A stretch of 64,000 bases of DNA from Camelus dromedarius (Eukaryota). Below, piece by piece: positions 3,668-7,861 of the stretch (position 1 is its first letter; every line of letters begins with the position of its first letter). The notes under the pieces were generated by a model that did no database searches, was not told the origin of the DNA, and saw only the letters and a list, made by a program, of their open reading frames with translations. The stretch lies in contig NC_087462.1 in assembly GCF_036321535.1 (NCBI RefSeq), positions 9,734,001 to 9,798,000 of the forward strand, given 5' to 3'. A program made the translations under genes and the position numbers.

Positions 3668-4391
3668 CTCGAACTTCAGAGTGAAGAGTGGGTGTCCCTA
3701 GCAGCAGGAGCTGCTCACTAGTCAAGGCTGTGGGGCAGGAAGGAACTTGACAAAGTTCCAGAGAAATGATTGGGGCAGGGGGAGGGGGGTTGGAGCAAGG
3801 GGAAGTTAGGGGACAAGGGGGTCAGAGGGCCTGTGGCAGGGATGGTGTTTGGGGGTCCCTAGGAGGACAGCAGAAGCCATAGAGGGGGAATCTACCAACC
3901 ATCTGAGTGGGGACCAGGGGACCTGAGGGCAGTGCAGAATTCTGGGAATTCTGGGTAGATGCAAGCATCCACCCCCAGTGCCACATACAGGAAGCTGCCT
4001 GGACAATAGTTGGGATTCCAGGAGAACTTAGAGGAAGGAAGAGGAGGGAACTGTGGGGCATGGGAGGATGCAAGAAAGTGGGTTAAAGGGTCTGTCAGAC
4101 CGTAGCCCTCAATTCTGAGAAGCAGAGAGGCTCTCTGGAGGAGGGGCTCCCAGAGCTTGGTACTGCAGGATGAATAAGGGTTTGGGGGATGTAGAAGAGG
4201 GGGGCATTGTGACACAGGCATGGTCTGTATGTGTCTGCAGATCCAGATTTGAATCCGAGCCCTGCACTTTCTGTGGGAAGGGATTGGGAACCAGGACAAA
4301 GTGTCTCTTTCACAGCCTCAGTTTCCTCCTGGAACCACTGTTATTAGGAGAAGATCCGGTGAGGAGATGGGAGTAGACCACTCTGCAGGCA

Positions 4392-4987
4392 TGTTGCTGA
4401 AAGATCAGCTCCGTCCCTGACGAGCCAAATAACTCAGAGACCAGGTCTTAGGGTTTAGAAGAAAAGAGGTATTTTTATTGCTTTGCCAGGCAAAGGGGCC
4501 TCACAGCAGGCTAGTGCCTTCAAAACTGTGAGCCCGTTTTAGGGCTGGGGCTTAGTGATTATACAGTGAACAAATTGGGGTGTAAAAGGGGACATTAATT
4601 AACAAAAGTCTCTGTTAAATCTTCCTCCTGGAAGCAGAGGATTCCATAGTCTGAATCTTGGTGTGTCTGCCCATGACCTTCTTTATCTGATCAGATTCAT
4701 CAGGCACCAGGAGGAACTTCTAGGGGTCTGGTCATTTTCCTAGGATTATTGTCCCATGACTCCCTTCCTGGGGGAATGACTCAAATTCCAAACATGATTG
4801 TAAACTTCAATTGCCAGAGTAAGGTAAAATAAACAAGGAGGTTAATAACTCTAACTCTAACTCTAACAATGGGCCTGGGGCTGGGGCCAGTGTCCGGTCA
4901 ATCAGATTTGCTGACCATTTTAAATCAAACGGCAAGTATAGGGCCAGGAATTAGCCTAAGTGTGGCCATTTTGTTATTTCTCCTTCA
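4392..4987 (-). mobile_element. Solo ERV1-class LTR, 596 bp, same orientation as BST2
   Basis: TG...CA termini, 4-bp target-site duplication GGCA (4388-4391 and 4988-4991), minus-strand AATAAA at 4479-4474. Confidence 0.85.
4474..4479 (-). terminator. LTR-borne AATAAA, first canonical poly(A) signal downstream of the BST2 stop
   Basis: tttatt on plus. No tttatt or tttaat was seen between 4480 and the stop codon at 5731. Confidence 0.5.
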
Positions 4988-5169
4988 GGCAGGGAGCACT
5001 GACCTGGGTGTAGAGTCCTTTAAGATAATCCCAGCAGAGGAAAGGGTTGGGGAGGCCCTGGAGTGGTGCTGGCTGGAACCCCAGGGATTCCTGGGGACAT
5101 TCTAGAACAGGGAAGGCTGGGTGTAGATGTCAATAGGTGTCCACCCTTGCCCACAGGGCAGGTCCTAGA

Positions 5170-5474
5170 TGCTTGGGGTGGCACAATAATACTCCAAAAA
5201 CTTTAGAGTAAGGTTTTTTCCCCCCTCAATGGGGCCCAAAGACCCCAGAAGGAAGTGACCTTCTAGAAACCGTAACAGCAAGAAGCACTCTGCATGCCCT
5301 CCCCAGCTCTAGGGCAGCCTTGGGCCCACTCCACTACTTCTCCATTCCCAAGGCATCCCTCGGGAGCTGCCCCATGGACCCCCTGCTGCCACCCCATTCC
5401 CCACCCCCCCAACCATGTTGCCATGTGGTCCCCTGAGAAAGCTGAGTGGGAACCGGACCAGTCCAGGTTGTGGC
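5170..5474 (-). other. BST2: BST2 exon 5 (3'UTR only); left boundary approximate
   Basis: Acceptor tttgatgtcttttag| at 5475-5476 and donor ccg|gtaagg after 5712. Sequence resembles the recalled human BST2 3'UTR (ttctggggtctttg...). Confidence 0.7.
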
Positions 5475-5730
5475 CTAAAAGACATCAAAATAGGGACTCA
5501 GAGGTGGACAGAACAGGGGCTCCGCCCCCTCTGAAGCCCCGCCCGGCTCCAGGGCCCCTTCCCTCCTCAGGGAGCTCTCTGTCCCGCTCCAAGATCCTTC
5601 TCCTCTGTGCCCAGCCCTCTACCTCCGCAGACAGGTCACCTCCCCAGGCCCTGACCCATCCCTGACTCCCGGCCCTTCTCAGCTTCTCCCCCTGGCTACT
5701 CCCCTCCTTACCGGCCGGCTTCCTGGGACC

Positions 5731-5842
5731 TCAGCCCTGCCAAGACTCGAGGCATAGGATCAACATGTTCAGAGTGATCAGGAAGCCCAGGATGCTCCAG
5801 CAGCTGGAAGAGCTGTTAGCTGCTGAGGCCTCACTTCTTTTT
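5731..5842 (-). CDS. BST2: BST2 exon 4 CDS (RKRSEASAANSSSSCWSILGFLITLNMLILCLESWQG*)
   Basis: Acceptor ctccag|A, phase 2. Stop TGA at 5733-5731 is followed by ggtcccaggaagc, as after the human stop. Confidence 0.85.
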
Positions 5843-6113: not shown

Positions 6114-6171
6114 CTTTGTCGCTCTGCCTCCTCCAAAGTGTTCAGCTTCTGTTTCAATGTCAGGACCTCAT
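6114..6171 (-). CDS. BST2: BST2 exon 3 (58 nt; DEVLTLKQKLNTLEEAERQR)
   Basis: ccaccag|AT...CAAAG|gtccga. Phases 1 to 2, as in human. Coiled-coil heptads. Confidence 0.88.
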
Positions 6172-6440: not shown

Positions 6441-6516
6441 CCTGAAGCTCCTCTGCACGTGCCAGCTGCTCCCGACCCAGAGCCTTCTCCTTCTCCAGGG
6501 AATCCCTCAGGGTCTC
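6441..6516 (-). CDS. BST2: BST2 exon 2 (76 nt; ETLRDSLEKEKALGREQLARAEELQ)
   Basis: catcccag|GAG...CAGG|gtgagc. Phases 0 to 1. Confidence 0.9.
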
Positions 6517-7296: not shown

Positions 7297-7605
7297 CACA
7301 GATTGGATGCAGATGGTGGCCTGGGCTTTGGTCTCCTGTAAGACTTCCTCGGTCTGGGTTAGCTGCCGCTGCAGGAGGTTGGTGGAGTTCTGACACTCCT
7401 GCTCTGCTTGGAGGCCATCCTTGCAGCTCTTGCTGTTGGCCCTGATAGTGAAGATGATCAGGGGCACAAGCAGAGCCACCACCACCAACACCATCAGAAA
7501 CAGCAGAAACCACAGCCATCCCGGCAGCTTGCGGCCCCGCTGCATCAACTTCCTACAGCAGTCGAGCATGGGCATAGGGCTGTAGTGATAAAAAGTGGGT
7601 GCCAA
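7297..7605 (-). CDS. BST2: BST2/tetherin exon 1. Ancestral start position is TTG (7605); first ATG at 7575.
   Basis: (L)APTFYHYSPMPMLDCCRK...TM...RANSKSCKDGLQAEQECQNST...ATICIQSV. The three ectodomain Cys are conserved. Donor GTG|gtaagc. The spliced product is 184 aa from TTG or 174 aa from the first ATG. Confidence 0.93.
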
Positions 7606-7680
7606 CCAGATCTGCCGGTAGGGAGTTTGGATGGGAGTTAGAGAAGGGCGCTGGAACCTTCTGTGGACTGGGGCTGCCCC

Positions 7681-7861
7681 CTTATAAGCATAGGAGCTGT
7701 GCTGACCAATGATGAGTTCTGGGAGGGTCCTCTGACTTGGAGGTGTTGAACACGAAATCTGCAGGCAGAGGACAGCCCAGGCTTTAGGTTTCGGTTTCCT
7801 TTTCATTTTCCCAAGAAAAAAGGTGAGTTGTTTCTGCCAAATTATAGCCTTGGGGATTTCT
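7681..7861 (-). promoter_or_regulatory. BST2 promoter: TATA-like box, tandem ISRE/IRF-E, GAS-like site, NF-kB-like site
   Basis: TTATAAG at 7687-7681. GAAAATGAAAAGGAAACCGAAAC at 7810-7788. TTCCCAAGAA at 7808-7817. GGGGATTTCT at 7852-7861. BST2 is an established interferon-stimulated gene. Confidence 0.75.

What the first reader, a model, noticed from the sequence alone, without database searches (positions are those of the whole stretch)
7567..7612. Tetherin start codon is TTG while the Y6-x-Y8 signalling peptide is intact
Seen: the minus strand reads gatctgg TTG GCA CCC ACT TTT TAT CAC TAC AGC CCT ATG CCC ATG, i.e. L1-A-P-T-F-Y6-H-Y8-S-P-M11-P-M13. There is no AUG between the TATA-like box (7687) and M11. 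Known: human BST2 reads gatctgg ATG GCA (recalled), with Y6/Y8 and M13 at the same numbering. The long isoform uses YxY for clathrin endocytosis and NF-kB signalling, while the M13 short isoform lacks it and resists some viral antagonists. Short-tailed tetherins are reported in cat and horse. Inference: either this lineage lost the long isoform independently, or UUG (with +4 G) acts as a weak near-cognate start that tunes the long:short ratio. The uninterrupted YxYxxM peptide is consistent with the latter, but a recent mutation would look the same.
Basis: partly seen in the sequence, partly recalled or inferred. Interest (0 to 1): 0.8.

Follow-up and report, generated by a model that had tools for sequence, protein, structure and literature searches.

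The report
Camel tetherin lost its long-form start
In camels and alpaca the antiviral gene BST2 (tetherin) has TTG where other mammals have the first ATG, so it most likely makes only the short protein that lacks the tyrosine signalling and endocytosis motif, as already described for cat, horse and other mammals.

Summary
On the minus strand, TTG (7605-7603) sits at the position of the canonical BST2 start codon. It is followed by an intact A-P-T-F-Y-H-Y-S-P peptide and by in-frame ATGs at codons 11, 13 and 21.

The TTG is not an assembly error or a recent mutation. It is present in three further camelid genome assemblies (wild camel, Bactrian camel, alpaca) and in a spliced RNA-seq contig. 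It therefore predates the camel/llama split.

The best reading is a fixed loss of the long isoform:
- The UUG has a poor context (-3 U).
- UUG reaches only 5-10% of a consensus AUG even in the best context.
- A GUG at the same position in NZW mouse tetherin could not initiate translation.
- Donkey carries the same TTG in the same context, yet its YxY motif has decayed.
- A porpoise-like cetacean keeps the intact peptide behind an AGG, one of the two least efficient near-cognate start codons.

An intact peptide is therefore not evidence of translation, and zero changes in codons 1-10 is expected by chance (P=0.38).

Two additions. The alpaca gene is also broken (M13R, and a TAG stop before the membrane anchor). 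The camelid coding sequence evolves at or above the neutral rate.

This is a new member of a known kind. I found no paper describing it for camelids.

The parts
7603..7605 (-). TTG at the position of the canonical BST2 start codon (M1 of orthologues). Context aucuggUUGg, with -3 U and +4 G.
   Evidence: The same TTG is in C. ferus, C. bactrianus, alpaca and an RNA-seq contig.
7576..7602 (-). Former codons 2-10 (A-P-T-F-Y6-H-Y8-S-P), carrying the dual-tyrosine motif. Now most likely 5' untranslated leader.
   Evidence: The peptide is identical to lemur and the cetacean orthologue. It shows 0/27 nt differences from alpaca and 1/27 from the porpoise-like sequence.
7567..7575 (-). M11-P-M13, the first AUGs of the mRNA and the likely real starts. 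M11 is a camelid-specific gain (GTG to ATG). Both have weak context (-3 C, +4 C).
   Evidence: The NCBI dromedary isoform X1 model (P0011) starts at M11.
7543..7545 (-). M21, a third in-frame AUG before the membrane anchor. It could be reached by leaky scanning.
7297..7575 (-). Exon 1 coding part from M11: short cytoplasmic tail, transmembrane anchor (about 7518-7444), and the start of the ectodomain with three conserved cysteines and one retained N-glycosylation sequon (NST).
6441..6516 (-). Exon 2 (coiled-coil ectodomain).
   Evidence: Splice sites checked. The RNA contig maps here.
6114..6171 (-). Exon 3 (coiled-coil ectodomain).
5712..5842 (-). Exon 4: serine-rich stretch, hydrophobic C-terminal GPI-type signal, stop TGA at 5733-5731, and the start of the 3'UTR.
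4855..5474 (-). Exon 5 (3'UTR), joined after a 3'UTR intron (5711-5475). The RNA contig ends at 4855, so the true end lies further downstream.
   Evidence: L002 mapping.
7681..7687 (-). TATA-like box (ttataag), about 82 nt upstream of the TTG, matching the human spacing.
   Evidence: Human spacing from PMC3989765. Conserved in 7 species.
7787..7812 (-). Interferon response element (gggaaaatgaaaaggaaaccgaaacc), with the core GGAAACCGAAAC conserved across artiodactyls.
   Evidence: alignment. The human promoter description is in PMC3989765. The functional assignment is by inference.
7804..7806 (-). Upstream in-frame ATG inside the interferon response element. RefSeq models use it as the start for three Camelus species (246-251 aa). 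Probably an annotation artefact.
   Evidence: The ATG is absent in porpoise, hippo and pig, and out of frame in alpaca.

Best explanation
This is the dromedary-type BST2/tetherin gene. In a common ancestor of living camelids the canonical start codon mutated from ATG to TTG, and the change became fixed.

Scanning ribosomes now pass the UUG. They initiate at the first AUGs, M11 and M13, and possibly M21 by further leaky scanning. Camelus therefore makes only short-tail tetherin. That protein lacks the Y6-x-Y8 motif, which in human tetherin serves clathrin/AP2 endocytosis and NF-kB signalling. The intact YxY codons are an untranslated relic in the 5' leader.

Shown here:
- The TTG sits at the orthologous position.
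- It is present in four assemblies and in mRNA.
- The downstream reading frame is intact and the mRNA is correctly spliced.

Inferred:
- Translation starts at M11/M13.
- The product is a working, interferon-induced short tetherin.

Alpaca went further and carries a broken gene.
For: 1. Identity and position. Pfam BST2 E=5e-16. Orthologues align from residue 1 at 7605. The 7-species DNA alignment places the TTG at the pig and seal ATG.

2. Real and old. TTG is present in the C. ferus and C. bactrianus genomes, in alpaca and in a spliced RNA-seq contig from an independent run.

3. Poor initiation prospects:
- The context has -3 U.
- UUG reaches at most 5-10% of a consensus AUG in the best context, and non-AUG codons depend more strongly on context (PMC5778536).
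- Even the human AUG here is leaky because of the -3 pyrimidine (PMC3460627).
- In NZW mouse tetherin (ATG to GTG), mutating M13 and M16 abolished all product, so GUG at position 1 did not initiate (PMC3310811).
- No unusual RNA structure lies downstream of the UUG (z=-1.2).

4. Natural controls:
- Donkey has the same TTG in the same context, but reads L-A-L-T-S-Y-H-N-W, with Y8 lost.
- The porpoise-like cetacean keeps A-P-T-F-Y-H-Y-S-P behind AGG. AGG is one of the two least efficient near-cognates, too weak to quantify in PMC5778536.
- Hippo has ATA and a decayed motif.
- Peptide integrity therefore does not track initiation potential.

5. In alpaca the frame from the TTG ends at a TAG at codon 30.

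6. The NCBI dromedary isoform X1 model starts at M11.

7. Precedent. Loss of the long isoform through a start-codon mutation is described for cat, NZW mouse and the bat Taphozous melanopogon, and short or N-terminally deleted forms are described for horse, guinea pig and elephant.
Against: - Codons 2-10 have no substitution among four camelid species, and only one (synonymous-type) change from the inferred artiodactyl ancestor. Purifying selection on a translated peptide would give the same pattern. It is equally expected by chance (P=0.38).
- +4 is G, which helps some near-cognate codons.
- No protein, ribosome-profiling or 5'-end data were available, so the actual start site is inferred.
- Three RefSeq models propose a longer protein from an upstream ATG that would include the YxY motif.
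- Whether the Camelus protein is still functional is not shown. The coding sequence evolves at or above the neutral rate on the camel branch too (12 non-synonymous to 2 synonymous changes). One N-glycosylation sequon is lost.
Confidence: 0.8

Rival explanations
1. UUG at 7605-7603 acts as a weak near-cognate start. Camels would then still make a small amount of long, YxY-bearing tetherin, with the long:short ratio set very low.
For: - The frame from the UUG is open, and the YxY peptide is intact in all three Camelus species.
- +4 is G.
- UUG can give detectable initiation in reporter libraries.
- Zero changes in codons 1-10 contrast with 19 changes in the next 127 nt between camel and alpaca (Fisher P=0.025).
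Against: - The context has -3 U.
- UUG reaches 5-10% of a consensus AUG at best.
- GUG at the same site in mouse tetherin gave no product.
- Donkey has the same TTG and context with a decayed motif.
- The porpoise-like sequence keeps the same peptide behind a very poor AGG.
- Alpaca has a stop at codon 30 in this frame.
- The 0/30 result is expected under neutrality (P=0.38). The Fisher contrast reflects the unusually fast tail and membrane anchor, not a slow leader.
- No pausing structure lies downstream.
Confidence: 0.06
2. Camelus uses the upstream in-frame ATG at 7806-7804, as in RefSeq models XP_031293431, XP_032321208 and XP_045364140. This would make an N-terminally extended tetherin (246-251 aa) in which the YxY motif is internal.
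For: - The frame is open from 7806 to the TTG.
- The ATG is in frame in all three Camelus species, owing to an A-run one base shorter than in alpaca.
- Three NCBI gene models use it.
Against: - The ATG lies inside the interferon response element and about 120 nt upstream of the conserved TATA-like box. It would therefore lie outside a transcript that starts where the human one does.
- It is absent in porpoise, hippo and pig, and frame-shifted in alpaca, where a stop follows after 7 codons.
- The same frame is also open upstream in porpoise and donkey models. Openness is thus an inherited accident of a conserved promoter.
- The only RNA contig found starts 7 nt upstream of the TTG.
- A newer dromedary model starts at M11.
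- Gene predictors commonly extend a model upstream to the first ATG when the aligned start is missing (my knowledge).
Confidence: 0.04
3. BST2 is decaying in the whole family. Start-codon loss in the camelid ancestor was the first disabling step. Alpaca has since acquired a stop, and the Camelus reading frame is intact only by chance and no longer serves as a tetherin.
For: - Alpaca has M13R, W30 to TAG, and a membrane-anchor insertion.
- The camel/alpaca ectodomain has pN/pS about 1.0 and the whole coding sequence 1.6.
- The camel branch has 12 non-synonymous to 2 synonymous changes.
- The three exonic differences within Camelus are all non-synonymous, one of them a premature stop five codons early.
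- The second N-glycosylation sequon is lost through two substitutions.
- My rough estimate is that a 174-codon frame would stay open by chance over this time with a probability near 0.3.
Against: - The reading frame and all splice sites are intact in three Camelus species.
- The mRNA is expressed and correctly spliced.
- The interferon element and TATA box are conserved.
- The three cysteines, the membrane anchor and the GPI-type signal are retained.
- The tail and anchor evolve far above the neutral rate (P=2e-8), which suggests selection rather than drift.
- Ratios near or above 1 are usual for antiviral restriction factors (my knowledge).
- Short-only tetherins of cat and NZW mouse are fully active.
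Confidence: 0.12
4. Assembly or sequencing error: the true codon is ATG.
For: None found.
Against: The same TTG appears in four genome assemblies of four species and in an RNA-seq contig.
Confidence: 0.01

Closest known systems
[quoted passage not shown] 2012 as summarised in PMC3989765)
   Same: The canonical AUG is lost and translation runs from the conserved downstream methionine. The product lacks the dual-tyrosine motif. The rest of the gene is intact and interferon-driven.
   Different: This is a different lineage and an independent mutation. In camelids the YxY codons remain intact in the leader, and a new AUG (M11) arose two codons upstream of M13. Function has been tested in cat but not in camel.
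NZW/LacJ mouse tetherin polymorphism, ATG to GTG (PMC3310811)
   Same: A single-base change turns the start into a near-cognate codon. Experiments showed no initiation at that codon and use of M13/M16. The result was higher surface expression and better retrovirus restriction.
   Different: The mouse change is a within-species polymorphism. The camelid change is fixed across a family and is TTG rather than GTG.
Equine tetherin (donkey XP_044629916; horse listed among short or N-terminally deleted forms in PMC3989765)
   Same: The codon (TTG) and context (gatctggTTGg) at the orthologous position are identical, so this is a convergent mutation. The NCBI model likewise starts at an upstream ATG.
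   Different: In donkey the former codons 2-10 have decayed (P3L, F5S, Y8N) and part of the tail is deleted. In camels they are unchanged.
Taphozous melanopogon bat tetherin, ATG to CTG plus a TAG between the two starts (PMC9599465)
   Same: The long isoform is lost by start-codon mutation in a single lineage within a clade that otherwise keeps it.
   Different: The bat has a second, unambiguous lesion (a stop codon) in the leader peptide. Camelus has none. Alpaca's stop lies downstream of M13 and so also kills the short form.
Human l-/s-tetherin made by leaky scanning (PMC3460627)
   Same: The gene architecture is the same, with a -3 pyrimidine at the first start position, M13 conserved, and YxY at residues 6 and 8.
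   Different: Human keeps the AUG and makes both isoforms in similar amounts. Camelids have no AUG at position 1.

Membership tests
BST2/tetherin (Pfam PF16716) | Sequence match to the BST2 ectodomain profile | tested here: met
   E=5.3e-16, 59.5 bits against a cutoff of 27. 90 homologues, all BST2-like.
BST2/tetherin (Pfam PF16716) | Double membrane-anchor topology: short N-terminal tail, transmembrane anchor, coiled-coil ectodomain with three cysteines, hydrophobic C-terminal GPI-type signal | tested here: met
   Read from the spliced translation: WLWFLLFLMVLVVVALLVPLIIFTI; cysteines in SKSC, EQEC and TIC; C-terminus ANSSSSCWSILGFLITLNMLILCL. No dedicated TM or GPI predictor was run.
BST2/tetherin (Pfam PF16716) | Orthologous locus and interferon-responsive promoter | tested here: met
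The promoter, TATA-like box and GGAAACCGAAAC element align with pig, hippo, cetacean, seal and donkey BST2. There is a single copy in the window.
Short-isoform-only tetherins (start-codon loss class: cat, NZW mouse, T. melanopogon) | No AUG at the orthologous M1 position | tested here: met
   TTG aligned to the ATG of pig and seal.
Short-isoform-only tetherins (start-codon loss class: cat, NZW mouse, T. melanopogon) | The change is real and fixed in the lineage | tested here: met
   Four species and assemblies plus one RNA-seq contig. Population samples were not examined.
Short-isoform-only tetherins (start-codon loss class: cat, NZW mouse, T. melanopogon) | In-frame AUG downstream, before the membrane anchor, with no intervening AUG | tested here: met
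   M11, M13 and M21. No ATG in any frame from the TATA-like box to M11.
Short-isoform-only tetherins (start-codon loss class: cat, NZW mouse, T. melanopogon) | Only the short protein is detected | not testable with these tools
   Needs a western blot, N-terminal mass spectrometry or ribosome profiling.
Proteins with a functional near-cognate (non-AUG) N-terminal extension | Near-cognate codon in a favourable context (-3 purine, +4 G) | tested here: not met
   aucuggUUGg has -3 U and +4 G. UUG is among the weaker codons.
Proteins with a functional near-cognate (non-AUG) N-terminal extension | Coding-type conservation of the extension beyond the neutral expectation | tested here: inconclusive
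   0/30 differences between camel and alpaca, P=0.38 under the local neutral rate of 3.16%. The alpaca frame is stopped at codon 30. The donkey extension, with the same TTG, has decayed.
Proteins with a functional near-cognate (non-AUG) N-terminal extension | Direct evidence of initiation at the codon | not testable with these tools
   No ribosome-profiling or proteomic data are available here.

The most novel reading that the evidence does not exclude
Camels may still produce a trace of YxY-bearing tetherin, by initiation at the UUG or from the Camelus-specific in-frame upstream AUG at 7806. The signalling and endocytosis isoform would then be turned far down rather than abolished. That would be a natural example of a restriction factor's isoform ratio being set by a near-cognate start.

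A second open reading is that the whole camelid family is shedding tetherin, with alpaca as a natural knockout.
Probability: 0.08. Interest if true: 0.65.

Novelty: new member of a known kind. Interest (0 to 1): 0.35.

Why it matters
Tetherin's long isoform carries the motif for endocytosis and NF-kB signalling. It is also the form most exposed to viral antagonists that act on the cytoplasmic tail. Short-only tetherins in cat and NZW mice sit at higher levels on the cell surface and restrict virus release at least as well, but the short form does not signal.

Three points follow:
- Camelids, which host several zoonotic enveloped viruses, appear to belong to the short-only group. Alpaca appears to lack a working gene altogether. 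This should be kept in mind when camelid cells are used to study interferon responses.
- Public RefSeq models for three Camelus species that start in the promoter are probably wrong.
- Within Artiodactyla alone the first start codon was lost at least three separate times (camelids TTG, cetacean AGG, hippo ATA), and equids carry the same TTG as camelids. This supports the view that dropping the long isoform is a recurrent and probably favoured outcome.

Tried and rejected
- Exact-protein look-ups for the dromedary X1 model and for the M11-to-intron reading frame found no contigs. Independent camel DNA had to be reached through other gene models.
- A scan of metagenome contigs for the 36-nt motif, allowing any base at the first position of the start codon, found nothing.
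- The bacterial-type promoter and terminator scan is irrelevant to a mammalian gene and found nothing.
- Folding the leader RNA gave no structure beyond chance (z=-1.2). A hairpin that could pause ribosomes at the UUG is not supported.
- A second BST2 copy with an intact ATG in the window was rejected. tblastn finds one copy only.
- Literature searches for camel, alpaca or dromedary together with tetherin or BST2 found no paper that describes the camelid gene. Blanco-Melo et al. 2016 is not held in the library, so I cannot exclude that it lists camelids.
- Confirmation of the alpaca stop codon in llama, guanaco or vicuña was not possible. No such proteins or contigs were reachable.

Full report
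**What is there**

The minus strand of the window between about 7656 and 4855 carries a single BST2/tetherin gene. Exon 1 translated from 7605 reads L-A-P-T-F-Y-H-Y-S-P-M-P-M-L-D-C-C-R-K..., followed by a transmembrane stretch and the start of the ectodomain. It matches Pfam BST2 at E=5e-16. tblastn with twelve orthologues finds one copy only, and every full-length orthologue aligns from its residue 1 at 7605.

The coding exons are 7605-7297, 6516-6441, 6171-6114 and 5842-5731. All have GT/AG borders, and the frame is open to TGA at 5733-5731. The observation as written is therefore correct. TTG occupies 7605-7603, M11 7575-7573 and M13 7569-7567, with a further in-frame ATG at 7545-7543.

No ATG in any frame lies between the TATA-like box (TATAAG from 7686) and M11. 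The box lies about 82 nt upstream of the TTG. In human it lies 81 nt upstream of the ATG, with transcription starting 51 nt upstream (PMC3989765).

**Is the TTG real?**

Yes. The window is dromedary-type: the NCBI models P0011 and P0101 match it exactly. The same TTG in the same place is found in:
- the Camelus ferus assembly GCA_009834535.1;
- the C. bactrianus assembly GCA_048773025.1;
- the alpaca assembly GCA_048564905.1;
- a Logan contig assembled from RNA-seq run SRR33129663.

The RNA contig begins gatctggTTGgcaccc and is spliced exon 1-2-3-4, followed by a 3'UTR intron. The codon is thus confirmed in independent reads and in mature mRNA.

By parsimony the mutation predates the split between Old World camels and the llama group. 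One abstract puts that split at more than 11 million years (PMC13751797). From my own knowledge it is usually put nearer 17-25 million years.

**Comparison with other mammals**

A seven-species DNA alignment of promoter and exon 1 shows these codons at the start position:

| Species | Codon |
|---|---|
| Pig | ATG |
| Grey seal | ATG |
| Dromedary | TTG |
| Alpaca | TTG |
| Porpoise-like cetacean contig | AGG |
| Hippo | ATA |
| Donkey | TTG (same gatctggTTGg context) |

Within Artiodactyla the first start was therefore lost at least three times, by different single-base changes. Equids reached the same TTG independently.

Seal, lemur, panda and bats begin M-A-P-T-F-Y-H-Y-(S/W)-P. The camelid A-P-T-F-Y-H-Y-S-P is thus simply the ancestral peptide. 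M11 (GTG to ATG) is a camelid-specific gain.

**Loss or weak UUG start?**

Several lines favour plain loss.

- *Context.* The context is aucuggUUGg, with a pyrimidine at -3. In human tetherin the same -3 pyrimidine makes even the AUG leaky (PMC3460627).
- *Codon strength.* In a complete motif survey, UUG reached at most 5-10% of a consensus AUG. Non-AUG codons depended on context more strongly than AUG (PMC5778536).
- *Direct precedent.* In NZW mouse tetherin the start is GTG. Mutating M13 and M16 abolished all product, so the near-cognate at position 1 was not used (PMC3310811).
- *RNA structure.* Folding the predicted leader shows nothing beyond shuffled controls (z=-1.2).
- *Natural controls.* Donkey has the same TTG and context but has lost Y8 and changed three of the nine residues. 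The cetacean keeps the peptide intact behind AGG, which the same survey found too weak to quantify. Whether the peptide is intact therefore does not follow the initiation potential of the codon in front of it.
- *Alpaca.* The frame from the TTG meets TAG at codon 30.

**Does the conserved peptide argue for translation?**

Camel and alpaca differ at 3.16% of non-coding sites around the gene. At that rate, 30 nt would show no difference with probability 0.38. Codons 2-10 are identical in all four camelids, so dN/dS is undefined there.

Against the cetacean, the camel differs at 1 of 27 positions. Against hippo, pig, donkey and seal it differs at 5-6 of 27. That is much like the adjacent 5' leader, at 62/75 to 49/69 identical.

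There is a significant contrast between codons 1-10 (0/30) and the next 127 nt (19/127, Fisher P=0.025). It arises because the tail and membrane anchor are unusually fast, not because the leader is unusually slow.

**The upstream-ATG models**

RefSeq models for C. ferus, C. bactrianus and one dromedary isoform begin at ATG 7806-7804 and read straight through the TTG, giving 246-251 aa. I consider these models unlikely:
- The ATG lies inside the interferon response element, about 120 nt upstream of the conserved TATA-like box.
- It is absent from pig, hippo and the cetacean.
- It is out of frame in alpaca, whose A-run is one base longer.
- The open frame upstream of the start is also seen in cetacean and donkey models, so it is an inherited accident.
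- A newer dromedary model starts at M11.

Without 5'-end data I cannot exclude the upstream start.

**State of the gene in the family**

Alpaca carries M13R, W30 to TAG just before the membrane anchor, and a 3-nt insertion in the anchor. It also carries K62M, which the annotators used as the start of a 123-aa product with no membrane anchor. On this single assembly, alpaca BST2 looks like a pseudogene.

| Camel vs alpaca comparison | Result |
|---|---|
| Cytoplasmic tail, non-synonymous : synonymous | 9 : 0 |
| Tail plus membrane anchor, pN/pS | 2.65 |
| Ectodomain, pN/pS | 1.04 |
| Tail, excess over neutral rate | P=5e-5 |
| Tail plus anchor, excess over neutral rate | P=2e-8 |

Polarising with five outgroups gives 14 changes on the camel branch (by my reading 12 non-synonymous and 2 synonymous), 15 on the alpaca branch and 4 ambiguous. 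Within Camelus the three exonic differences are all non-synonymous. One is a stop five codons before the end in the two-humped camels. Camelus has also lost the second N-glycosylation sequon, C-N-Q-T becoming C-I-Q-S.

These data fit either diversifying selection on a working restriction factor or relaxed constraint. I favour a working short tetherin in Camelus:
- The frame and splice sites are intact in three species.
- The promoter elements are conserved.
- The mRNA is made and correctly spliced.
- Short-only tetherins work well in cat and mouse.

I give about one chance in eight that the Camelus gene is no longer functional.

**Relation to what is known**

Recurrent loss of the long isoform is established. 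Cat has a start-codon mutation, and guinea pig, horse and elephant have short or N-terminally deleted forms (PMC3989765). NZW mouse has ATG to GTG. The bat Taphozous melanopogon has ATG to CTG plus a stop (PMC9599465).

I found no paper that describes camelid tetherin. This is therefore a new member of a known kind. The side observations also seem undescribed: alpaca's broken gene, three separate losses in Artiodactyla, and the same TTG in equids.

**Verdict**

- Observation: confirmed.
- Interpretation: the loss alternative is supported and the tuned-UUG alternative is not.
- Interest: modest (0.35).
- Most novel reading still open: residual long isoform from the UUG or from the upstream ATG, at about 8%.

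Noticed in passing
L001:5815-6126 (alpaca, GCA_048564905.1); orthologous to window 7605-7297: Alpaca BST2 has M13R (ATG to AGG), a TAG stop at codon 30 where camels have TGG, a 3-nt insertion in the membrane anchor, and K62M. The annotated 123-aa protein starts at M62 and has no membrane anchor, so the gene looks like a pseudogene in alpaca.
   Followed up: partly
window 7575-7444 (cytoplasmic tail from M11, and membrane anchor): Camel and alpaca differ at 19 of 127 nt here, against 3.2% in introns and flanks (P=2e-8). The tail has 9 non-synonymous and 0 synonymous changes. Both lineages contribute. This is faster than a pseudogene should evolve, so past positive selection is likely.
   Followed up: partly
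window 7308-7300: The second conserved N-glycosylation sequon (C-N-Q-T in alpaca and all outgroups) is C-I-Q-S in all three Camelus species. It was destroyed by two substitutions.
   Followed up: partly
window 5748 (codon 180): C. ferus, C. bactrianus and the RNA contig have TAG where the dromedary has GAG. This ends the protein five residues early, after the hydrophobic C-terminal signal.
   Followed up: partly
L007 (donkey), L003 (porpoise-like Logan contig), L009 (hippo), start-codon column of the alignment: These are independent losses of the first tetherin ATG: donkey TTG (identical codon and context to camelids), cetacean AGG with an intact YxY peptide, and hippo ATA with a decayed peptide.
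   Followed up: partly
window 7804-7806: RefSeq BST2 models of three Camelus species start at an ATG inside the interferon response element of the promoter. This is probably a prediction artefact caused by the missing canonical start.
   Followed up: partly
window 5711-5475 and 5474-4855: The RNA-seq contig shows a spliced 3'UTR intron and a 3'UTR running at least to 4855. The contig ends before any poly(A) site.
   Followed up: partly
window 4114-4182, minus strand: A short frame (S-T-K-L-W-E-P-L-L-Q-R-A-S-L-L-L) matches the alternative C-terminus of elephant seal BST2 isoform X3 (tblastn E=4e-4). It may be a conserved alternative last exon giving a form without the GPI signal, or a shared repeat.
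   Followed up: no
window 7609-7607, minus strand: An out-of-frame CTG with good context (-3 G, +4 G) lies 4 nt upstream of the TTG. It would open a 19-codon frame that overlaps M11 and M13 and stops at about 7555. Its use is untested.
   Followed up: no
   Followed up: no
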